64,000 nt of DNA, taken from NCBI GenBank assembly GCA_026770705.1, contig JANJGN010000071.1, positions 2,232,001-2,296,000 of the forward strand, given 5' to 3'. Source of the DNA: Isurus oxyrinchus. Taxonomy: Eukaryota. The position numbers and the translations under genes were made by a program. The notes under the pieces were generated by a model that was given only the letters and a program-made list of their open reading frames with translations, was not told where the DNA came from and did no database searches. Positions 1 to 60,699 of this stretch are shown here, piece after piece (the stretch's first letter is position 1; the number at the start of each line of letters is the position of its first letter).

Positions 1-1475
1 CCCCACTCTCCAAGAACTCGCTTTGGAATCTCCTCCAACATGACACTTTCACTCAGACACCTTCCACAAGGGTCCACTTTCACTATTTCAAACTCTCCTT
101 CCCATGTTCCTGTCCCCTGGATCGCCACGTGCATTCAGCCTTCCTTCCACGCCCTGTCTCTCCAATGCTCAGCCGTGTCAATGGAACACCATGGCTTCAC
201 ATGGCCGTAGTAATGAGTCACCAACCTGTGGTGTCTCCTAGGATCTTCTGGCTTCTCACAAGCCTATTTTGCTTTAGGTCTGTGTCCTGCTGCTTTCTCC
301 CTTTATGTTTCGAGCATTCTTCTGTTCCTCACTCTTAACTTCACTTAACAGGGCCTTTCCCAGATTTGACTAGAAGGTTTTCTTGGGCCCTTTCTCCTGT
401 TCCACTCGATGGTTTTGGCTTCATCTTTACTTTGGGACTGACTATCTGTCCCGCTCCTTTGCTGCTTCTCCTGGCAACTCCTTTCAACAGAACTGAAAGT
501 ACTTTTCTGTTTTTCTTTGTCTCTGTGTGTCCCTCCCTCTGGACCACTGTTACTCGGCAACAGCACAGTTTCTTCTACCTTGTGTTTGTTTTGACTTCCC
601 TTCAAGAGTCATAAAAACTCATTAGATAGGCGGCTTCTTCCAAAGTGAAACCAAAACTCAAGTTCCCCCTTTTCAAAACACCCAAATACAGAAATACAAA
701 CTAAACTTGAACTGAAAGATATACCTTATGCCTAACGCACTCAAATACACAGAGAACTTCCTTAAGCCAACCCCAGTTCCAAAAAATCACATGACACACT
801 TCCCCTCGAGTGATGTCATGCTGCTGTCCCTGAAAGGCATATTACAGCAGTGTTATCACTTGGCAGGTGATGTGTGCCAGGCAGACCAAGTCCATGAGAG
901 AAAGCTGGTCACACGATCATAAAGATTTTTGATTTTTTTTATTTATTATGAGATGTGTGCACTGAATTCAGAAGCAATATGTCCACAAAGACCTTTAGAG
1001 ATTTAAAACAATAAATTAAATATTTGCCATCAAAATAAAAGATTTCAAGCACATACATAAGACTACAATGACTGCTATAATAACTCCTAAAATTCCTAAT
1101 TAACCTGACTCCCAGTTACACTTCCTTTAAGGCAACAGACCAAAAATAGATGTTAGATTTAAAACAAACTCAGCAAGTTAACCCAATGCCCTGGACAATG
1201 GAATTCCAAATGGATTTTACCCAACTTCAGTTCTGTTGGATAGCAGGCTTGTGCACAAACAGGGTCCTGAGGACCATGAGCCAATGTAGAATGAACTTGT
1301 CCACTCCTGTGTCCAGGATTCTCTCCCATCCATTGTGAAACCTTGGGGAGTTCCATGTGTGTCCTGTAGATGGTCCACACTGCAGCCACTGTTCCCAAGT
1401 GATGGAGGGGGCGGATATCAAGTCTAGTGGATCTACAAACCATCCAGAGTTAAATATTGATATTTCTCTCTCCAG

Positions 1476-1862
1476 TTGGACTGTCACAAGAGTGGAAAGG
1501 TGACACTCCACGAGAGGTGACAGCGCAGGAAGGTTCGTGTGTACAGATTCCATGTCATTACAGTTATCCAGCACTTCTAGTAGGGAGAGCACGTGTTGGA
1601 ATCTGGTATGTGAAATGGTACACATGGAATACATGGAATACAAGGTCTAGAGGGACCATAGCATTTCACTCCAAGGATCACAGTCACGAGTTACCACGGT
1701 TCCACCATCGGACCCGGCTGTCTGGAGACCTGAAAGATGGCGGCTGTTCCCTGATTATAAACAACATCAGACGGGAAGATGAAGGATATTATTATTTCAG
1801 AATAGAATTTGACAATGGTCCGAGCCATAACTATTACCCTGTAACCCAGCTTCAGGTTTCTG
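1476..1862 (+). CDS. Siglec-like gene A, V-set Ig exon 1 (V1)
   Basis: AG acceptor ends at 1475, GTAAGT donor at 1863; 387 nt, phase 1-1. GSCVQIPC...GIW...LSGDLKDGGCSLII...EDEGYYYFRIE. Siglec hallmarks: B- and E-strand Cys, extra pre-B Cys, no F-strand Cys, essential F-strand Arg. Confidence 0.93.
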
Positions 1863-2089
1863 GTAAGTGCTGTGTTATAATTACTCAACAATTCACATCC
1901 AACACTCAATGGGAAATAATAGTGTTTGATTTGCTTGTTTTTTGGCCGTGTTAACCAGCGTCACTATTTTTAATGATTTGTCTATTTCTGCTCCCAGATC
2001 CATGAGCTTATTGTGTGTGATTGAATCCACATCATAGCTGTAACGTAAACTGAGCGGAGGGGTGATGACACCTCCCCCCTGAGTGAAGT

Positions 2090-16291: not shown

Positions 16292-16911
16292 GTGTTATCA
16301 CTTGGCAGGTGATGTGTGCCAGGCAGACCAAGTCCCTGAGAGAAACCTGGTCACACTATCATAATGATTTTGCAATTTGTATTTATTATGAGATGTGTGC
16401 ACTTAATTCAGAAGCACTAACTCCACCAATACCTTCAGAGATTTAAAACAATAAATTAACATATTTGTCATCAAAATAAAGGATTTCAAGCACATACGTA
16501 ACTACAAGACTGCTATCATAACTCCTAAAATTCCTAATTAACCTGACTCCCAGTTACAGTCCCTTTAAGGCAACAGACCAAAAATAGATGTTAGATTTAA
16601 TAAAAATCAGCAAGTTAACCCAATGCCCCGGACAGTGGAATTCCAAATGCATTGTCCCAACTTCAGTTCTGTTGGAGAACAGGCTTCTGCACAAACAGGG
16701 TCCTGAGGACCATGAACCAATGTAGAATGAACTTTTCCGCTTTTGTGTCCAGGATTCTCTTCCATCTGGTGTGATACCTTGTGGAGTTCATTGTGTGTCC
16801 TGTAGATGGTCCACACTGCAGCCACTGTGCCCGAGTGATGGAGGGGGTGGATATCGAGTCTAGTGGATCAACAAAACATCCAGAGTTAAATATTGATATT
16901 TCTCTCCCCAG

Positions 16912-17289
16912 TTGGATTGTCACAAGAGTGGAAAGGTGACACTCCACGAGAGGTGACAGCGCAGGAAGGTTCGTGTGTACAGATTCCATGTCATTACAGT
17001 TATCCATCAGATTTGGTAAAGAAACCACAGGTCGGAATCTGGAAAATGAGAAGATACATACAGAACAAATGGTCTAAATGGTCTATAGCCTTTCACTCCA
17101 AGGGTCACAGTCGCGAGTTATCACAGTTCCACCATCGGACCCGGCTGTCTGGAGACCTGAAAGATGGCGACTGTTCCCTGATTATAAACAACATCAGACG
17201 GGAAGATGCAGGACCTTATTTTTTCACGATAAAATTTGGCAATGGTCCGAGCCATAACGTTTCCCCTGAAACCCAGCTTCACGTTTCTG
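16912..17289 (+). CDS. Gene B V-set exon 1 (essential Arg replaced by Thr)
   Basis: 378 nt open, AG/GTAAGT, phase 1-1; ...PYFFTIKFGNGPSHNVSPETQL. Confidence 0.92.
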
Positions 17290-17519
17290 GTAAGTTCTGT
17301 GTTATAATTACTCACCAATTCACATCCAACACTCAATGGGAAATAATAGTGTTTGATTTGCTTGTTTTTTGGCTGTGTTAACCAGCGTCACTATTTTTAA
17401 TGATTTGTCTATTTCTGCTCCCAGATCCATGAGCTTATTGTGTGTGATTGAATCCACATTATAGCTGTAACGTAAACCGAGCTGAGGGGTGATGACACCT
17501 CCCCCCTGAGTGAAGTGTC

Positions 17520-26428: not shown

Positions 26429-26710
26429 ATGGACCACAGAATCTCTCAATTAATTCTCTTGATATGATTAACGCTTCATCGGTCAATATAATTGAGGGGA
26501 ATTCTGCAGTGATAATCTGCTCTGTCGAGAGCTTCCCAGCTTCTAACCTGACGTGGCGACATCTTAATGTCCCAATGAACAGAACAAGTTCCAACAATGA
26601 GCTGTGGTTGGTGATTCCTCACGTTACATCCAGGGACACTGGAGACTATCAGTGTGTGGCAGAGAATGAACATGGAGCAGTGGAGGGATTCATAACCATC
26701 ACTGTGGAAT
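26429..26710 (+). CDS. Gene B C2-set exon 2
   Basis: 282 nt, TTTTAG/GTGAGT; DGPQNLS...EGNSAVIICSVESFPASNLTW...DTGDYQCVAENEHG. Confidence 0.92.
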
Positions 26711-26769
26711 GTGAGTGTGGAGATACATTTGTTTGTTTGTTGTCTCCGTGGTCTCCGTGGAGCCATTGG

Positions 26770-27040
26770 GATCGTGTTGTTTTTAATCCAGTTTTCTTCA
26801 ATCCTCGCTCAGTCCACGTTATCCACACACCCAATTTTTCCTCTCCCTTTCTGTTTTTGCTCTCAGTTTCTCCTTCAATGGTTGTGAGGACAAGGCTGTC
26901 AGGTCTTCGTTTCCAATCTCCGTACTTGATGAACTTTCTCTCTCTAACTGTCCTGAACAACCCTTTTAATTGCTGAACGTCTCCTCTTGATCTAAGCCAC
27001 TCATTGGTCTTTCTGTCCATCCAGCTGATTCTGAGCATCT
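26770..27040 (-). mobile_element. RTE-like LINE 3' fragment
   Basis: LRISWMDRKTNEWL...IEG motif. Confidence 0.6.
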
Positions 27041-53587: not shown

Positions 53588-53800
53588 TTGCGTCAATATG
53601 AACACATATTTGCACAAGGTGAAGGGCGTTGCGGAGGGACTGATAGTTCTCGGCGCCAGACAGTCAATGTCCCAGTGACCTTACTGCTGGTCCCAGGCCA
53701 GTGGGACAGGGAACATCGACACTGCAATATCCAGAAATGGGTGTGATACCACACAGCTACCCACCCGCGGCTGTCCCCTTCAAGTGTTTCAGGTATAAGA
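53588..53800 (+). promoter_or_regulatory. HAMP: Hepcidin proximal promoter
   Basis: TTGCGTCA (53588, C/EBP-ATF/CRE-like); TTGCACAA (53610, C/EBP); TCGGCGCCAGAC (GGCGCC BMP/SMAD element 53652-53657 plus AGAC); degenerate STAT-like ATCCAGAAA ~53729; TATAAGA 53794-53800. Confidence 0.7.
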
Positions 53801-53870
53801 GCAGGAAGCTCCTCTAGTTACAAACCAAAGCATCAAAGCAGAGCCAGAAGATCAGAAGAGACAGGCAGAG

Positions 53871-53963
53871 ATGGGAAGCTCCCAGATGAAATGGCGACTT
53901 GTCTTGTTCACTCTGACTTTGCTGCTCTCCCTGCAGCTGAGTCACTTCTTCTCCTTGTCGAGG
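53871..53963 (+). CDS. HAMP: Hepcidin exon 1 (signal peptide)
   Basis: MGSSQMKWRLVLFTLTLLLSLQLSHFFSLSR|GTAAGC; 93 nt, phase 0; resembles the mammalian MALSSQIW...LLL leader. Confidence 0.85.
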
Positions 53964-54159
53964 GTAAGCTAAGAGATGTCCCTCTGGGTGAGGTGTTTCT
54001 TGCACATGACTCTACGTCTACCACCCAGATAGACTGGTCACTTCCGCAGTTTGATATTATTATGTTGGTGCGTTTAATATTGTCGCCCTCTATGAATTTA
54101 ACATCATTTCCTTCTGTCGTTTCCCCTGAAATTCTCATTCTTGTTTTCAATCCCTCCTC

Positions 54160-55060
54160 AGCGACTCCCTATCTCTGTAACCTCCTCCAGCCCGTACAAC
54201 CCTCCCTATCTCTGTAACCTCCTCCAGCCCCTACACCCCTCCCTATCTCTGTAACCTCCTCCAGCCGCTACAACCCTCCCTATATCTGTAACCTCCTCCA
54301 GCCCCTACAACAATCCCTATCTCTGTAACTTCCTCCAGCCCCTACAACTGTCCCTATCTCCGTAACCTCCTCCAGCCCCTACAACTGTCCCTATCTCCGT
54401 AACCTCCTCCAGCCCCTACAACCCTCCCTATCTCTGTAACCTCCTCCAGCCCCTATAAACCTCCCTATCTCTGTAACCTCCTCCAGCCCCTACAACCCTA
54501 CCTATCTCTGTAACCTCCCCCAGGCCCCACAACCCTCATGATCACTGTAACCTCCTCTAGACCCTACAACCCTCCCTATCTCTGTAACCTGCTCCAGACC
54601 CTACAACCCTCCCTATCTCTGTAACCTCCTCCAGACCCTACAACCCTCCCTATCTCTGTAACCTCCTCCAGGCCCCACGACCCTCAGAATCACTGTAACC
54701 TCCTCCAGCCCCTACAATGCTCATGAACTCTATAACGTCCTCTCCACACTATAACTCTCTCTATCTCTGTAACCTACTGTGGCCCCTACAACAGTATCTA
54801 TTTTGGTAACCTCCTCCAGCCTCGACAACCCTCCCTACCTCTGTAACCTCCTCCAGCCCCCACAACCCCCCCATCTCTTTAACCTCCTACAGCCCCTACT
54901 CACCTCCCTATCTCTGTAACCTCCTACAGCACCTACAACCTTCCCTATCTCTGTCACCTCCTACAGCCTCTAGAACCCTCCCTATCTCTGTTACCTCCTA
55001 CAGCCTCTACAACCCTCCCTATCTCTGTAACCTCCTCCAGCCGGAACAACCCTACCTAAA
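54160..55060 (+). repeat. 37-bp minisatellite in hepcidin intron 1
   Basis: CTCCCTATCTCTGTAACCTCCTCCAGCCCCTACAACC, about two dozen copies. Confidence 0.92.
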
Positions 55061-55114
55061 TCTCTGGTCTGAGTCTCACTCCAGGGAATTCAGTCCCATA
55101 ACGTCGGTCAACAC

Positions 55115-55710
55115 TCCGTGCTGAGGGAGTGCTGGACTGTCAGAGGGTCAGTAGTGTGGAAGTGTTGCACTATTGGAGGGACAGTACTGAGTGAGTGCTA
55201 TACTGTCGGAGGTCAGTACTGAGGAAGTGCTGCATTGTTACAGGGTCAGTACTGTGGAAGTGTTGCACTGTCGGAGGGTCAGTACTGAGGGAGCGCTGCA
55301 CTGACGGAGGGACAATACTGTGGGAGTGCAGCACTATCGAAGGGTTAGTACTGAGGGAGTGCTGCAGTGTCAAAGGATTAGTACTGAGGGAGCACAACAA
55401 TGTTGAATGAGACATTAAACTGAGTCCCCCGTCTGCCCTCTCGGGCGGGTGTGAAAGATCCCACAGCCACTATTTGGAGGAAGAGCAGGGGGGAGATCTC
55501 CCCGGTGTCCTGGGACCAATATTTATCCCTCACCCAACATCACCAAAAACAGATGATCTAGGCCATGATCACATTGCTATTTGTGGGATCTTGCTGTGCA
55601 CAAATCAGCTGCCACATTTCCTAAAGTGTGAGTGCACTTCAAAAACATCCTTCAGTGGCTGTGAAATGCTTTGGGATGTGGTGAAAGGCGTTAGAGAAAT
55701 GCAAGTCTGT
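55115..55710 (+). mobile_element. Deu-domain SINE (SacSINE1/AmnSINE1-like) with amplified 33-bp unit; second copy ~57395-58000
   Basis: GAGACATTAAACTGAG..GTCTGCCCTCTC..AAAGATCCCA..CCTGGGACCAATATTTATCCCTCA..TTTGTGGGATCTTGCTGTGC; recognised from memory of the Deu core. Confidence 0.7.
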
Positions 55711-55807
55711 CCTCCTCCCCCTCTCTCTCCTGTACCTCTCTCTCTCTCTCTCCCTCTCCCTCAATCCTCCTCTCACTTTCTCCCTGATAAATTCTTTCTT
55801 TTTGCAG

Positions 55808-55864
55808 GTTGACACTGCTTTAGGTTCTTCGACGATTGAGAAATCTGTGGATTCCCCGGACACG
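55808..55864 (+). CDS. HAMP: Hepcidin exon 2 (pro-region)
   Basis: Long polypyrimidine tract + TTGCAG, donor ACG|GTAGGT; 57 nt, phase 0-0; VDTALGSSTIEKSVDSPDT. Confidence 0.78.
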
Positions 55865-58091
55865 GTAGGTGGAAATTCATTCCTTATTTTAAGGTTTCTC
55901 CCTGCTCGTTTCTTCCACAGAAAGTTTTCTGATTTCAAGCTGATTTCAGTGGCAGTCTGTCTCGGTTATACTCAGGAGGCATGTTTGAAATCGAGCCCCC
56001 CCCAACTTTTTTTGCAAAGCTGGGAAGAGACAATTCCAAGGAAGTGAACATATCCCCACAGGAATTTTAAATGTAACCCACGCCGGGAATAGTGAGAGGG
56101 AGACTGATCCAGCCTGGGAGTGGGTTAAAGAGAGGCTGGGAGTCGAGAGTCGGAGAGAGGGATGGAATGGGGGAGGGAGGGATTGGAAGAGAGAGACAGA
56201 GAGTGGGATGGGGAGGGGTGAAAGGGAAAGAACATAGGTGGGAGAGAGTGACAGAGGGAGAAATTAAAGAAGAGATGCAGAGTGAGGGAAAGTGAAAAGG
56301 GAAGAGAGATTGTCCAAGAGAGAGAAATTAACAGGGAAGGGAGAGTTACAGAGTGAGCGAAAGGTACAAAAATAGTGTGAGAGGGAGAGATACAGAGTGG
56401 GAGAAGGAGACAGGGGAGAGAGAGGGAGAGAGACAGGAAAAGGGAGAGAGGAGAGAAAGATTGGGAGAGAGGGCAATTGAGAGGAAGAGTAGGAGAGAGA
56501 GAGACAGGGAGAGGAGGAGTGGATGAGAGGAAGAGAGAGAGAGATATGGAGCAGGAGAACACCTCCTCCGGTCCCGATGTTCCTCCAAAATCTCTGACAT
56601 TACTGCATCTCCCGGGTCCCCCTGATTCCCATCGCTCCACCATTGGTGGCCGTGCCTTCAGCTGCCTGGGTCCCTGAGCTCCGGAATACCCTCCCTTAAC
56701 CTCTCTGCCTCTCTCTCTCTCTCTCCTTTAAGACGCTCCTTAAAAACTGACATCTTTGACCAAGCTTTTGGTCACCTAACCCTAATATCTCCATATGTGA
56801 CTCAGTGTTAGACTTCTCTCTGATTTACGCTCCGGTAATGTGGGCTGGGACATTTTGCAATGTCAGAGGCGCTGTGTAAATGCAAGTTGTGAGTGTTATG
56901 TGGAAGGGCGACCCCAGGCGGCAGTCAGTGCCAGTGACTGGAGTCATTGTGCGCAGACCATATCTAATCTCTCCGAATGCACAATCGGTTTGACTGTCAG
57001 CCAAAGCACTTTTGATATTTGATCCTTCTAACTGTTTATAACCAGGCCTACATCATACACCGAGAGGCTGGTTAATCAACAGACACCTTAGAGGATCAAG
57101 TGAAAGACAAAGAGGACTTGCATTTCTCTAGCGCCTTCCAACACATCAGGACGTCCCAAACTGTTTCGCAGACAATCAAGTGCTTTTTTTCTTTCATGTG
57201 AGGTCACTGATGTACTGTGGGAAAAGAATCAGCCATTGGCGCACAGTAAGATCCCACAGACAGCAGCATGATAATGACCAGCGCACTCCCAGTACTTGCA
57301 CTGCAAGTGTCAGTTCAGGGTGTCTGCTCGATTCTCTGCAACTCTCAGCTCTGAGTTAAAAGGACCACCAGGCGTAATTGAGAAATTACCGAGCTGTCGG
57401 AGGGTCAGTACCGGCGGGGGGGCAGGACTTTCGGAGGGTCAGTACTGAGGGGGTGCTGCATTGTCAGACGGTCAGTCTTGGAGTGCTGCATTGTCAGAGG
57501 GTCAGTACCGGCGGGGGACTGCACAGTCGGAGGGTCAGTACTGAGGGGGTGCTGCATTGTCAGACGGTCAGTACTGAGGGAGTGCTGCACAGTCGGAGGG
57601 TCAGTACTGAGGGGGTGCTGCACTGTTGAAGGCGCTGTCTTTCAGATGAGATGTTAAACTGAGACAACATCTGCCCTCTCAGATGGATGTAGAGGATTCC
57701 ATGGCCACAATTTAAATGAAGTGCGTCAGGAGTTGGGGGTATGTGTGGAGGGGGTGGTGGGGGGTGGATGGGATGCAGTTATGTCTGCTTTCCTGGGGCA
57801 AACATTTATCCCTCAACTGACATTGGTAAAAACCTGAAAATCGGGGCCATTATCACATTTCTGTTTGTGGGATCTTGCTGTGCGTGAATTGCCTGCTGCG
57901 TTTCCTACATTACAGCGGTGAGCTCACTTCAGAAAAAGTCCTTCCTTCAGCTGTGGAACACTTTGGGCCATCCTGAGGAGGGGAAAGGCGCTATAGAAAT
58001 GTGCCATCCTCCTTCCAATGACGCGCCTGATTGAAATGATGCCTTCTTTCTTTCCGGAATGTTCTCACCTATTGTCCTCCTGCTTTTCCAG

Positions 58092-58208
58092 GGCTCCTTG
58101 CTGCAGCGCCAGAAGAGAATGGGCAGACAGCAGCTCTGCAGATTCTGCTGTAACTGCTGTAATTGGAGAGAACCAAATGAGACTTGTGGTCTCTGCTGTA
58201 GATATTAG
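58092..58208 (+). CDS. HAMP: Hepcidin exon 3 (furin site + mature 8-Cys peptide)
   Basis: TTTTCCAG acceptor; GSLLQRQKR|MGRQQLCRFCCNCCNWREPNETCGLCCRY*; C-x2-CC-x-CC...CG-x-CC hepcidin signature. Confidence 0.93.
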   Translation, partial: GSLLQRQKRMGRQQLCRFCCNCCNWREPNETCGLCCRY

Positions 58209-58536
58209 ACCCTGGCCTCATTCACGCAAGGTCATCCTGCACCATGCCACAGCCTCTCCCCTCCTTATCTACTGCTTAGCAATCTATTTCACACAGGCCC
58301 TGTTCATTAATTCCAACTGAAACTTTACCTGCGTTTTACAGCAGGGAAAGAAGCCATTCGGCCCATCTGTTCCATGCTGGAGTTTCTGCTCCACACGAGT
58401 CTCCGCCCACCCCTTCTCCATCTCACCCCATCACCATATCCTTCTATTCATTTCTCCCTCGTGTGTTTATCCAGCTTCCCCTTAAATACATCGACACTAT
58501 TCACCTCACGTGACTGTGTTTGTGTCTGTCTTTATG

Positions 58537-58573
<37 letters not shown>

Positions 58574-58677
58574 CTGTCAATATGTGTGTGTCAATGTGAA
58601 TGTGTGTGATTGTGTCAGCGTGTGTGTGTGTATGTGTGACTGTCAGTGCGTGTCAATGTGAATGTGTGTGATTGTGT

Positions 58678-58710
<33 letters not shown>

Positions 58711-60699
58711 ACTGTGTCAGTGTGTGTCAATGTGAATGAGTGAGTGTGTCAGTGTGTCTGTGTGGGTGTGTGTGACTGTGTCAGTGTGTGTCAATGTGAA
58801 TGAGTGAGTGTGTCAGTGTGTCTGTGTGGGTGTGGGTGTGTGAGTGTGCAAGTGAATGTGTGAGGAATCTTATGACTAAGTCATTTGAATGGATGTTACT
58901 GGGGTTAATGATAGTTAAAATTCAGAGTGATGTAAAGCGGGCTCCTGATTTTGCTGCTTTATGCTCCCGGGCACAGATTGACCCCGACAATGTGTTCATG
59001 ATTCACCATCATCTTGTCGGGACTTTAATTGTAAAGATTATGATTTGTGAAAAAAAATGAATAAACAACTTGTGTCTTCACAAAGTGTCTGGCTTGGTAT
59101 TTCAGGCTACTTGTCTCTCCCTCACCCTCCCCCCCCACCATGCCCCCCACACCAGGGAACAATTGTCCCCCCTTCCTCTGAAGTTCTGGGTAAAGATCAG
59201 CTTTGTTCAATGCAAGCTGTTCCGACATCGAGAACGTTGTTACAAATATCTCACAAAGGGCACACGCCATGATAGCCCACTTTCAACAGATTTTACCAGT
59301 TGACCAGGTTGAAAACCTTTTCATAAACCACAACGTAGGTGTTCAATTCTTGCTGCTGTTTGCTTAATGTTCTCATAACTGCTATAACCTCTCTAGTTCC
59401 ACTACATAACAACACCAACATAAATAAACAGAAGCAGGAGTAGGCCTTTTGGCCTCCCAAGCCAGCTTGTCCATTCAATTTGAACCTGGCTCCTGCTGAA
59501 AGTTATTTAAGTTGAAGCGATAAAGCCATCAGGTGCAGGGATTAAAATGTAAGCAAAGGAAAAATAATACTTAGACATGAGATTTAAAATCAGTTTCTGT
59601 GAAGAATCATACTGAGGCCATTGCACTGGATTCCTTCTTTCCAGAGTGAAGGGTTTAAAACTAGGAGTCACATTCAGCAGCTGCGTTGTCTTCTCTAGTT
59701 GACTATTTGGAGGTTGCCTGTAGATGTGAATCAGCAGGTCAGCAGCTTTGGGGAGTGAGTGAAGGTCCCTTTTATTTACAGGATCTGCCACAGGATGTGC
59801 AGGAATATTCCTGCTGAATTCTCCATCCTTGCATTCATGAAGGGTTTGAAACTGGAAGTCATATTCAGCAGCTGCAATGGCCTCTGTAGCCAACTGTCTG
59901 GAGGTTGCCTGTACAGGTGGACTCAGCAGGTCAACAGCTTTGTAGGGCCGGGGGGTGCACGGGTAGTAAAGGTCCCTTTACTTTAAAGGCTCTGCCAGTG
60001 CAACACTTGATGATCCTGGGTCAAAATCATGTATCACCCTCCCCAACAGCACTGTGGATGTGCCCTATGGAGGTTCCTTGGCTTCGACAAGCAGCCTACC
60101 AGCTCTACTCTCAATTCCTCTTCGCACTTGCTTCCTTCCTCCTCTGGTCTTTACTTTGTTATAGTGTTAGTGTCCGCTCTGCCTTTTTTGTTGCTTTCCC
60201 AATTCTTCCCACCAACTCTCTCTGGCTTGATCCTTCTCTGTGCTCATCTCATTGGTTTGGGTTTCTATCCGTTCATTGACCTGGTGTCATCTGAAACTGG
60301 TGCAATCAGGTAGGGGTGGGGGGGTTGGCGCTGGCCGTGGGTGGTGATACACGGCTACCTTTTTACCAAAATTCTTTCACGGGATGTGGACAGCGTTTGT
60401 TACCTGTTCCTGACTGAGCCCTTGAGAAGGGGGTGCTGAGCTGCCTTTTCGAAGTGCTGCAGTTCGCCTGGTTTGACTGGTCTGTGGCGGGTTTTGATAT
60501 AACTCAGTGGCTTGCTCGGCCATTTCAGGGGCCAGTTAAGAGTCAACCACATTGCTGTGGGTCAGGAGTCACACGTAGGCCAGAATGGGTAAGGACGGCA
60601 GGTTTCCTTCCCCAAAGGGCATTAGTGACCCAGATGGGTTTTTGCAACAATTGGCCTTAGTTTCATGGTCACCATTACTGAGACTAGCTTCGCATTCCA

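What the first reader, a model, noticed from the sequence alone, without database searches (positions are those of the whole stretch)
58119..58208. Atypical mature hepcidin: no N-terminal His/Phe motif and a loop insertion with an N-glycosylation sequon
Seen: MGRQQLCRFCCNCCNWREPNETCGLCCRY (29 aa). Cys7/10/11/13/14 and Phe9 align with hepcidin-25, but the N-terminus is MGRQQL instead of DTHFPI or QSHLSL, and the hairpin loop has 8 residues (NWREPNET) instead of 4, including N-E-T and two Glu. Known: the N-terminal residues (His3, Phe4, Ile6) mediate ferroportin binding and His3 forms the ATCUN metal site; teleost HAMP2-type peptides lacking this motif are mainly antimicrobial. Inference: a neofunctionalised, possibly glycosylated hepcidin variant, or one co-evolved with a divergent ferroportin.
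Basis: partly seen in the sequence, partly recalled or inferred. Interest (0 to 1): 0.82.

Follow-up and report, generated by a model that had tools for sequence, protein, structure and literature searches.

The report
Diverged, expressed shark hepcidin gene copy
This is a real, spliced and transcribed shark gene for a hepcidin-type peptide whose long loop turns out to be normal for sharks, while its receptor-binding tip and loop chemistry have been rewritten, so it is most likely a side copy of the iron hormone and not the hormone itself.

Summary
The peptide is there exactly as described: MGRQQLCRFCCNCCNWREPNETCGLCCRY, 8 Cys, an 8-residue loop and an N-E-T sequon. It follows an RQKR convertase site in exon 3 of an intact three-exon, 88-codon gene. 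Pfam Hepcidin scores 31.6 bits against a cut-off of 27. Both introns are spliced out in contigs of one public run.

- **Loop and length:** the 29-residue length, Met1 and the 8-residue loop are the shark norm. Public hepcidins of Cetorhinus maximus and two Scyliorhinus species have the same frame, with a canonical M-S-H-L-S-[IV]-C tip and a basic loop.
- **What is special here:** the tip (G2 R3 Q4 Q5), the acidic loop and the sequon.
- **Divergence pattern:** against Cetorhinus the prepro part is 52/59 identical but the mature part only 12/29. The canonical form is 26/29 identical between the two shark orders.
- **Canonical sister:** a contig in the same run continues ...RQKR-M-SHLSICMYCC, so a canonical form is also expressed.

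I read it as a diverged paralogue, analogous to teleost hamp2, and probably not the ferroportin hormone. Function and glycosylation are untested. The scan has already met near-identical copies elsewhere in this genome.

The parts
53794..53799 (+). TATA-like box (TATAAG), about 75 nt upstream of the ATG
   Evidence: Read from the sequence. Contig depth in X1 rises within bin 53700-53856. The transcription start itself was not mapped.
53871..53963 (+). Exon 1 coding part: MGSSQMKWRLVLFTLTLLLSLQLSHFFSLSR (signal peptide and start of the propeptide), followed by GTAAGC
   Evidence: 29/31 identical to Cetorhinus maximus XP_078389754.1. Joint 53963|55808 in 11 contigs of X1.
53964..55807 (+). Intron 1 (GT..AG), holding a 37-bp minisatellite (54165-55058) and a repeat with 33-bp units (55121-55393)
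55808..55864 (+). Exon 2: VDTALGSSTIEKSVDSPDT (propeptide)
   Evidence: 16/19 identical to Cetorhinus. Spliced on both sides in X1.
55865..58091 (+). Intron 2 (GT..AG). A minor alternative acceptor at 57045/57046 is seen in one contig.
   Evidence: joints 55863->58091 in 9 contigs and 55862->58091 in one; 55863->57045 in one
58092..58118 (+). Exon 3, end of the propeptide: GSLLQRQKR. The proprotein-convertase site R-Q-K-R lies at 58107-58118.
58119..58205 (+). Predicted mature peptide: 29 aa, 8 Cys, K+R-D-E = +2
58119..58136 (+). N-terminal segment M-G-R-Q-Q-L before Cys7. The canonical shark form has M-S-H-L-S-[IV].
58161..58184 (+). Hairpin loop N-W-R-E-P-N-E-T between Cys14 and Cys23. Same length as NKKGTKKT / NRKGSKKT of canonical shark hepcidins, but acidic.
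58176..58184 (+). N-E-T sequon: Asn is the 79th of 88 codons and the sequon is followed directly by Cys23
   Evidence: Occupancy not testable here.
58206..58208 (+). Stop codon TAG
58209..58400 (+). 3' untranslated region, at least to the end of the stretch laid
   Evidence: X1 contigs cover 58253-58400 at exon-like depth. The end was not mapped. The first AATAAA lies at 59060.

Best explanation
The finding is exon 3 of an intact, transcribed paralogue of the shark hepcidin gene, lying next to Siglec/CD22-like receptor genes.

**Shown or read from the sequence.** The 88-codon precursor has a signal peptide and a propeptide. A proprotein convertase would cut it after R-Q-K-R, releasing a 29-residue peptide with the eight hepcidin cysteines. 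The cut site is read from the sequence; the cut itself is not shown.

**Inferred scaffold.** By analogy with solved hepcidins, the cysteines form a four-disulfide hairpin. The scaffold (length 29, Met1, 8-residue loop) is the ordinary shark hepcidin scaffold.

**What differs.** The surface has been rewritten. The N-terminal residues are G2 R3 Q4 Q5 in place of S2 H3 L4 S5. The loop is acidic and carries an N-E-T sequon, where the canonical loop is lysine-rich.

**Inferred function.** A canonical form coexists and is strongly conserved among sharks. I therefore infer that this copy is not the main ferroportin-regulating hormone. It is a secreted side copy, functionally analogous to teleost hamp2, with host defence or immune modulation as the most likely role. 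Its N-terminus probably binds ferroportin weakly or not at all.
For: - **Family membership:** Pfam Hepcidin above the gathering score.
- **Gene model:** canonical splice sites and an open frame. Both joints are present in contigs of X1, with exon bins at 1.7e5-7e5 against about 1e3 in non-repeat intron bins.
- **Shared shark scaffold:** gap-free alignment with XP_078389754.1 (Cetorhinus) and XP_038670190.1 / XP_072325013.1 (Scyliorhinus), which share the 29-aa length and 8-residue loop but have MSHLS[IV]C.
- **Reversed conservation pattern:** window against Cetorhinus gives prepro 52/59 and mature 12/29 (4/21 non-Cys), Fisher p=8e-6. Cetorhinus against Scyliorhinus gives prepro 38/59 and mature 26/29, p=0.012 in the opposite direction.
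- **Fold retained:** all 8 Cys, Gly24 and the convertase site are kept although 17 of 21 other residues changed. That argues for selection on the fold.
- **Canonical sister in the same run:** one X1 contig follows the window to 58121 and then reads AGCCACCTCTCGATCTGCATGTACTGCTGT, which is SHLSICMYCC.
- **Resemblance to teleost hamp2:** CRFCCNCC, P-N-x-[ST], CG-x-CCR-[FY] and charge +2 match bass/sea bass hamp2. That peptide protects against infection and does not alter iron parameters (PMC8502971).
- **Where hepcidin contacts ferroportin:** the N- and C-termini are buried in ferroportin, while the variable loop stays extracellular (PMC8235187).
- **Gene neighbourhood:** V-set/Ig_CD22 exons lie upstream on the same strand.
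Against: - **No functional data.** No function was measured.
- **Possible residual binding.** The peptide keeps six residues before Cys7, Leu6, Phe9 and a hepcidin-like C-terminus, so some ferroportin binding cannot be excluded.
- **Charge.** Its net charge (+2) is lower than that of the canonical shark form (+5), so it is not obviously the better membrane-active peptide.
- **Copy assignment.** Contigs cannot be assigned to this copy as opposed to near-identical copies elsewhere in the genome. The intronic contigs differ from the window by about 1-2%.
- **Thin evidence for the canonical sister.** In this animal it rests on one 30-nt loose end in a run whose organism is coded. The gene was not located.
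- **Depth is a poor measure.** The tool states that contig depth measures expression poorly.
Confidence: 0.7

Rival explanations
1. It is still an iron hormone: a hepcidin isoform that binds ferroportin despite the altered tip. The partner could be the ordinary ferroportin or the second ferroportin paralogue reported in some cartilaginous fish.
For: The scaffold, the six-residue N-terminal length, Leu6, Phe9 and the CC-[KR]-x C-terminus are kept. The transcript is abundant in X1. Some cartilaginous fish have a second ferroportin without the C326 thiol (PMC8235187).
Against: His3 and the hydrophobic residue 4 are replaced by Arg and Gln. These residues are conserved from sharks to teleosts and man. 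A canonical form coexists and is 26/29 conserved across shark orders, whereas this one is 12/29. No ferroportin was examined.
Confidence: 0.15
2. It is a functionless by-product of segmental duplication. The promoter still fires, but the peptide is drifting and has no selected role.
For: Earlier notes of this scan report many copies, including truncated and chimeric ones, in Siglec-hepcidin blocks of this genome (not checked here). The mature part has changed at 17 of 29 positions.
Against: The frame, the splice sites, the convertase site, Gly24 and all eight cysteines are intact although 17 of 21 non-Cys residues changed. Under drift of that depth, losing no Cys is very unlikely (inference). 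Spliced RNA is abundant.
Confidence: 0.1
3. It is an old second hepcidin lineage with an actinopterygian-like CRFCCNCC core, older than the shark radiation. Its exons 1-2 and the propeptide have been homogenised with the canonical neighbour by gene conversion. On this view it is not a recent, fast-evolving duplicate.
For: The mature part is closer to bass hamp2 (15 of 20 aligned residues) than to shark canonical hepcidin (12/29). Similarity to the canonical transcript breaks off sharply at 58121, with 12 differences in the next 30 nt and several codons changed at 2-3 positions (counted by hand).
Against: The peptide is short. Only a few positions (Arg8, Asn12, the P-N-x-[ST] of the loop and Arg28) carry the teleost resemblance, so convergence is easy. 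No such peptide was found in the Scyliorhinus or Cetorhinus protein sets, though those searches are insensitive. No DNA of sister copies was available.
Confidence: 0.15

Closest known systems
Canonical-type shark hepcidins: Cetorhinus maximus XP_078389754.1 ('uncharacterized protein LOC144671611 isoform X2'), Scyliorhinus canicula XP_038670190.1 ('hepcidin-2-like'), S. torazame XP_072325013.1 ('hepcidin-1')
   Same: An 88-aa precursor with the same three-part layout. The prepro part is 88% identical to Cetorhinus. All have a dibasic convertase site, Met1, a 29-aa mature peptide, identical Cys spacing, an 8-residue loop that begins with Asn and ends with Thr, and Gly24.
   Different: The tip is MGRQQL instead of MSHLS[IV], so there is no His3 and no hydrophobic residue 4. 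The core is CRFCCNCC instead of CVYCCGCC. The loop is NWREPNET (net -1, with a sequon) instead of N[KR]KG[TS]KKT (+4, no sequon). Net charge is +2 instead of +5.
Teleost type-2 hepcidin (sea bass hamp2 HSSPGGCRFCCNCCPNMSGCGVCCRF, PMC8502971; bass hepcidin, PDB 1S6W)
   Same: It lacks the Q-S-H-L-S-L tip and coexists with a canonical form. It shares an identical CRFCCNCC core, P-N-x-[ST] in the loop (also a sequon), a CG-x-CCR-[FY] end and charge +2.
   Different: The shark peptide has three more loop residues (N-W-R-E inserted in the HMMER alignment) and a different N-terminus. Its prepro part is that of shark hepcidin, so it most likely arose independently. Antimicrobial activity is shown for hamp2 but not for this peptide.
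Human hepcidin-25 (PDB 1M4F, 2KEF, 3H0T, 6WBV)
   Same: Eight Cys in the same order, six residues before Cys7, an aromatic residue at position 9, and a three-exon gene next to Siglec-family genes. The HAMP-MAG-CD22 arrangement in man is from my own knowledge.
   Different: Human has T2-H3-F4-P5-I6 and a 4-residue loop (HRSK). In the profile alignment it is the shark forms that carry four extra loop residues. This copy also lacks His3 and Phe4.
Scyliorhinus canicula XP_038669797.1 ('hepcidin-2-like', mature MTNHSICVYCCGCCNRENCGFCCKH)
   Same: A second, diverged hepcidin paralogue in a shark. It has an altered tip with His moved from position 3, and a sequon of its own (N-H-S).
   Different: It keeps the CVYCCGCC core and has a short 4-residue loop. 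It is a different, independent kind of divergence.

Membership tests
Hepcidin family (Pfam PF06446) | Profile score above the curated threshold | tested here: met
   31.6 bits against 27, E=2e-07, for the exon 3 product alone
Hepcidin family (Pfam PF06446) | Eight cysteines in the order C-x2-C-C-x-C-C-loop-C-x2-C-C | tested here: met
   Cys 7, 10, 11, 13, 14, 23, 26, 27, in the same columns as three shark hepcidins. The disulfide pairing itself is not testable here.
Hepcidin family (Pfam PF06446) | Prepropeptide of about 80-90 aa from a three-exon gene, with the mature peptide at the C-terminus after an R-x-[KR]-R site | tested here: met
   31+19+38 codons, GT..AG introns, RQKR at 58107-58118. 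Joints seen in RNA-derived contigs.
Hepcidin family (Pfam PF06446) | Genomic neighbourhood of Siglec-family (MAG/CD22-like) genes | tested here: met
   V-set/Ig_CD22 exons at 1457-1951 and 16893-17378, and an Ig exon at 26464-26973. The human arrangement is from my own knowledge.
Iron-regulatory (type 1, hepcidin-25-like) hepcidin | N-terminal x-x-His-[Phe/Leu]-x-[Ile/Leu/Val]-Cys motif, including the His3 metal (ATCUN) site | tested here: not met
   M-G-R-Q-Q-L-C. Only position 6 is kept.
Iron-regulatory (type 1, hepcidin-25-like) hepcidin | Strong conservation of the mature peptide among related species | tested here: not met
   12/29 to Cetorhinus although the prepro part is 52/59. The canonical forms are 26/29 across two shark orders.
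Iron-regulatory (type 1, hepcidin-25-like) hepcidin | Binds ferroportin and causes its occlusion or internalisation | not testable with these tools
   Needs a cell assay with shark ferroportin
Type-2 (hamp2-like, defence) hepcidin, in the functional sense | Lacks the type-1 tip and coexists with a type-1 gene in the same animal | tested here: inconclusive
   The tip is lacking. A canonical transcript end, SHLSICMYCC, appears in the same run X1, but the gene was not located and the run's species is coded.
Type-2 (hamp2-like, defence) hepcidin, in the functional sense | Antimicrobial or protective activity without effect on iron parameters | not testable with these tools
   Shown for sea bass hamp2 (PMC8502971), not for this peptide
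Type-2 (hamp2) hepcidin, as an orthologue of the teleost genes | Descent from the teleost hamp2 duplication | not tested
   The prepro part is that of shark hepcidin, which points to independent origin. No tree is possible on so short a peptide.
N-glycosylated peptide | N-x-[ST] sequon with x not Pro | tested here: met
   N20-E21-T22
N-glycosylated peptide | Sequon occupied | not testable with these tools
   The site is 9 residues from the C-terminus and next to Cys. That is the class served after translocation by STT3B, which prefers NXT (PMC3613688), and which needs MagT1 for Cys-proximal sites (PMC4137057). Occupancy is possible but uncertain.

The most novel reading that the evidence does not exclude
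Cartilaginous fish may run two hormone-receptor pairs. The canonical MSHLSI hepcidin would act on the C326-type ferroportin. This rewritten, possibly glycosylated copy would act on the second ferroportin paralogue that lacks the C326 thiol (reported in PMC8235187). If so, the hepcidin-ferroportin axis was duplicated and re-specified early in jawed vertebrates.
Probability: 0.05. Interest if true: 0.8.

Novelty: new member of a known kind. Interest (0 to 1): 0.35.

Why it matters
Hepcidin first appears in jawed vertebrates. Sharks therefore show what the earliest hepcidin-ferroportin system looked like.

- **A correction.** The 29-residue, long-loop form is the ordinary shark hepcidin. Loop length is not a sign of novelty, which fits the structural finding that the loop stays outside ferroportin.
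- **A parallel with teleosts.** Sharks, like teleosts, have spun off copies with a rewritten receptor-binding tip while keeping the fold. This points to a repeated, independent split of the family into an iron hormone and something else.
- **A gap in the literature.** I found no paper in the held library that describes shark hepcidin sequences. The public proteins carry only automatic names.
- **An easy test.** Synthesise the peptide and assay it.

Tried and rejected
- **Word search, exon 3.** I searched the 57-aa open frame around exon 3. No candidate came back. The index did not return even teleost hepcidins that share CRFCCNCC, so this blank says little.
- **Full HMMER search of 1.84 billion representatives.** With the 38-aa exon 3 product it gave only a spurious repetitive 577-aa protein. 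A query this short cannot reach E<0.001 against that library.
- **AlphaFold2.** I folded the exon 3 product with a 4-row alignment. Mean pLDDT was 55.9 and the helices are implausible. I discarded the model and ran no fold search.
- **The look-up of encoding contigs.** No dN/dS or gene-conversion test was possible.
- **Runs X5, X7 and X12.** They cover only the intronic repeats, not the exons. They say nothing about expression.
- **Paper searches.** No description of shark hepcidin peptides turned up.
- **Whole spliced model.** The joined 88-aa model was never built or searched as one sequence.
- **Rejected: a chance ORF or pseudogene exon.** See the observation check.
- **Rejected: the loop as a copy-specific insertion.** See the alignment.

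Full report
**1. Observation**

The stretch 58119-58208 on the + strand translates to MGRQQLCRFCCNCCNWREPNETCGLCCRY followed by a stop. Cysteines lie at 7, 10, 11, 13, 14, 23, 26 and 27, and Phe is at 9. The loop between Cys14 and Cys23 is NWREPNET. The only sequon is N20-E21-T22.

It is more than chance. The 38-residue exon product alone matches Pfam Hepcidin (PF06446) at 31.6 bits, above the curated 27. The best solved-structure match is bass hepcidin 1S6W. This is the only C-x2-CC-x-CC match in all six frames of the window.

**2. Gene model**

| Part | Coordinates | Product or feature |
|---|---|---|
| TATA-like box | 53794-53799 | TATAAG, upstream of the ATG |
| Exon 1 (coding) | 53871-53963 | MGSSQMKWRLVLFTLTLLLSLQLSHFFSLSR, then GTAAGC |
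| Exon 2 | 55808-55864 | VDTALGSSTIEKSVDSPDT, between AG and GTAGGT |
| Exon 3 | 58092-58208 | GSLLQRQKR, then the peptide |

All junctions are in phase 0, giving 88 codons. R-Q-K-R is a proprotein-convertase site in the same place as REKR and RQRR of other shark hepcidins.

The exons were searched apart, by reference, and the joined model was never built or searched as one sequence.

**3. Transcription**

Only contigs, not raw reads, were available. In run X1 (coded organism A) the joint 53963|55808 stands in 11 contigs. The joint 55864|58092 stands in 9 contigs, plus one contig with a one-letter variant. All have GT..AG ends.

Bins over the three exons and the 3' UTR have summed contig depths of 1.7e5 to 7.4e5. 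Non-repeat intron bins lie near 1e3. The tool warns that such depth is a poor measure, so I claim only that spliced RNA of this sequence is abundant in that run.

No differing letters are listed inside the exons. Intronic contigs differ from the window by about 1-2%. The RNA therefore cannot be assigned to this copy as opposed to alleles or near-identical copies.

Runs X5, X7 and X12 cover only intronic repeats. One contig uses an alternative acceptor at 57045/57046. Read in frame, that would end after nine more codons.

**4. Relatives**

The word search with the exon 3 frame found nothing. The full HMMER search found only a spurious repeat protein. Both are weak tests for so short a query.

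The exon 1 frame did find relatives. It hit Cetorhinus maximus LOC144671611. A search with that protein found Scyliorhinus canicula 'hepcidin-2-like' proteins, and the cluster look-up added S. torazame 'hepcidin-1'.

| Species | Accession | Mature peptide |
|---|---|---|
| Cetorhinus maximus | XP_078389754.1 | MSHLSVCVYCCGCCNKKGTKKTCGYCCKL |
| Scyliorhinus canicula, S. torazame | XP_038670190.1, XP_072325013.1 | MSHLSICVYCCGCCNRKGSKKTCGYCCKL |
| S. canicula, second gene | XP_038669797.1 | MTNHSICVYCCGCCNRENCGFCCKH |

The window's exon 3 product aligns to the first two without any gap. The 29-residue length, Met1 and the 8-residue loop are therefore shared.

A profile of the shark sequences hits human hepcidin-25 (1M4F and others) at E=0.01, with a four-residue gap on the human side of the loop. 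So the long loop is the shark norm across at least two orders. It sits on peptides with a perfectly canonical x-S-H-L-S-[IV]-C tip.

This fits the structural account. The variable loop stays outside ferroportin, while the N- and C-termini are buried (PMC8235187).

**5. What is special about this copy**

- **The tip.** It is G2 R3 Q4 Q5 in place of S2 H3 L4 S5. There is no His3 metal site and no hydrophobic residue 4. Leu6 and Phe9 are kept.
- **The core.** It is CRFCCNCC in place of CVYCCGCC.
- **The loop.** It is acidic and carries the sequon, where the canonical loop has four Lys/Arg.
- **The charge.** K+R-D-E is +2 against +5.

The pattern of conservation is reversed between the two comparisons.

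| Comparison | Prepro identical | Mature identical | Fisher p |
|---|---|---|---|
| Window vs Cetorhinus | 52/59 | 12/29 (4/21 non-Cys) | 8e-6 |
| Cetorhinus vs Scyliorhinus (canonical) | 38/59 | 26/29 | 0.012, opposite direction |

So the canonical mature peptide is under strong constraint. This one has been rewritten while keeping all eight Cys, Gly24 and the cleavage site, which argues against simple decay (inference).

**6. A canonical sister in the same RNA sample**

One X1 contig follows the window up to 58121 (...CAGAAGAGAATG). It then continues AGCCACCTCTCGATCTGCATGTACTGCTGT, which encodes S-H-L-S-I-C-M-Y-C-C (loose ends).

That is a canonical tip after the same R-Q-K-R-M. Over those 30 nt it differs from the window at 12 positions. 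All 12 lie in the seven non-Cys codons, and the three Cys codons are identical (counted by hand).

This supports the reading that the animal has both forms. It is only one short contig end, and I could not locate the gene.

**7. Resemblance to teleost hamp2**

The HMMER alignment to bass hepcidin shows CRFCCNCC identical, then NWRE as an insertion, then P-N-x-[ST] and CG-x-CCR-[FY]. That is 15 of 20 aligned residues.

Sea bass hamp2 (HSSPGGCRFCCNCCPNMSGCGVCCRF) also has charge +2. It protects against infection without changing iron parameters. Sea bass hamp1 (QSHLSLCRWCCNCCRGNKGCGFCCKF) causes iron retention (PMC8502971).

The sequon is not unprecedented at this place either, since hamp2 has N-M-S.

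Two explanations for the resemblance remain open: convergence, or an old lineage whose prepro part was homogenised by gene conversion.

**8. Glycosylation**

Asn20 is codon 79 of 88, and the sequon is followed directly by Cys23. Sites in the last 50-55 residues are glycosylated after translocation by STT3B, with a preference for NXT (PMC3613688). Cysteine-proximal sites need the MagT1 oxidoreductase (PMC4137057).

The site is therefore of a class that can be used but is often under-occupied. It also competes with rapid disulfide formation. I would put occupancy at roughly one in three. It cannot be tested here.

A further point, read from the sequence: R-M-G-R, formed by the last Arg of the site and M1-G2-R3, is a minimal R-x-x-R motif. 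A second cut would give a 26-residue peptide starting with Gln. This is speculation.

**9. Context**

V-set/Ig_CD22-like exons lie at 1457-1951 and 16893-17378, and an Ig exon at 26464-26973, all on the same strand. Hepcidin thus sits beside Siglec-family genes, as HAMP sits beside MAG and CD22 in man (own knowledge).

Earlier notes of this scan report many near-identical long-loop copies in Siglec-hepcidin blocks of the same genome. They include one truncated chimeric copy 25 kb beyond this window. One earlier follow-up reached the same view that the long loop is normal for sharks. I did not check those other loci.

**10. Verdict**

- **Observation:** confirmed.
- **Interpretation:** partly supported. 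The loop length is ordinary for sharks. The rewritten tip, the acidic loop and the sequon are real and specific to this paralogue class. A canonical form coexists.
- **Best reading (0.7):** an expressed, selectively maintained side copy that is not the main ferroportin hormone, functionally analogous to teleost hamp2.
- **Novelty:** a new member of a known kind.
- **Interest:** moderate. The scan has met it repeatedly.

Noticed in passing
window 58092-58121 and onward (run X1, table 7): One contig shares the start of exon 3 and then encodes SHLSICMYCC. This is a canonical-type hepcidin transcript in the same run. Its gene is not in this window.
   Followed up: partly
window 57045-57075: Exon 2 is joined to a minor alternative acceptor (GT..AG, one X1 contig). 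In frame it reads A-Y-I-I-H-R-E-A-G-stop, a truncated product without the hepcidin domain.
   Followed up: partly
P0002, P0006 (Cetorhinus maximus LOC144671611 isoforms X3 and X1): The annotated basking-shark isoforms splice hepcidin exons 1-2 onto unrelated downstream exons.
   Followed up: no
window 54165-55058: A 37-bp minisatellite in intron 1: 24 copies, 84% matches. It is covered by contigs in all four runs laid, so it is a dispersed and transcribed repeat family.
   Followed up: partly
window 55121-55393 and 57394-57626: The same 33-bp-unit repeat (CTGAGGGAGTGCTGCACTGTCGGAGGGTCAGTA) occurs in both introns, followed by similar unique tails. It is probably a SINE-like element. Depth is very high in every run.
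   Followed up: no
window 58107-58127: R-Q-K-R-M-G-R contains a second minimal R-x-x-R motif (R-M-G-R). Alternative processing would give a 26-residue peptide with N-terminal Gln. The canonical shark forms (…KR-M-S-H) lack it.
   Followed up: no
window 1457-1951, 16893-17378, 26464-26973: Siglec/CD22-like V-set and Ig exons lie upstream on the same strand as hepcidin (Pfam Ig_CD22, V-set, Ig_3).
   Followed up: partly
window 37357-37977: An open frame with a reverse-transcriptase domain (RVT_1, E=4e-10). It is probably a retroelement fragment between the Siglec genes and hepcidin.
   Followed up: no
window 58510-58848: A long imperfect (TG)n / 62-64-bp compound repeat lies 300 nt downstream of the stop codon, possibly inside the 3' UTR.
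   Followed up: no
P0005 (Scyliorhinus canicula XP_038669797.1): The catshark's second hepcidin has a short 4-residue loop, a shifted His (M-T-N-H-S) and its own N-H-S sequon at the tip. It is another, independent diverged shark paralogue.
   Followed up: no
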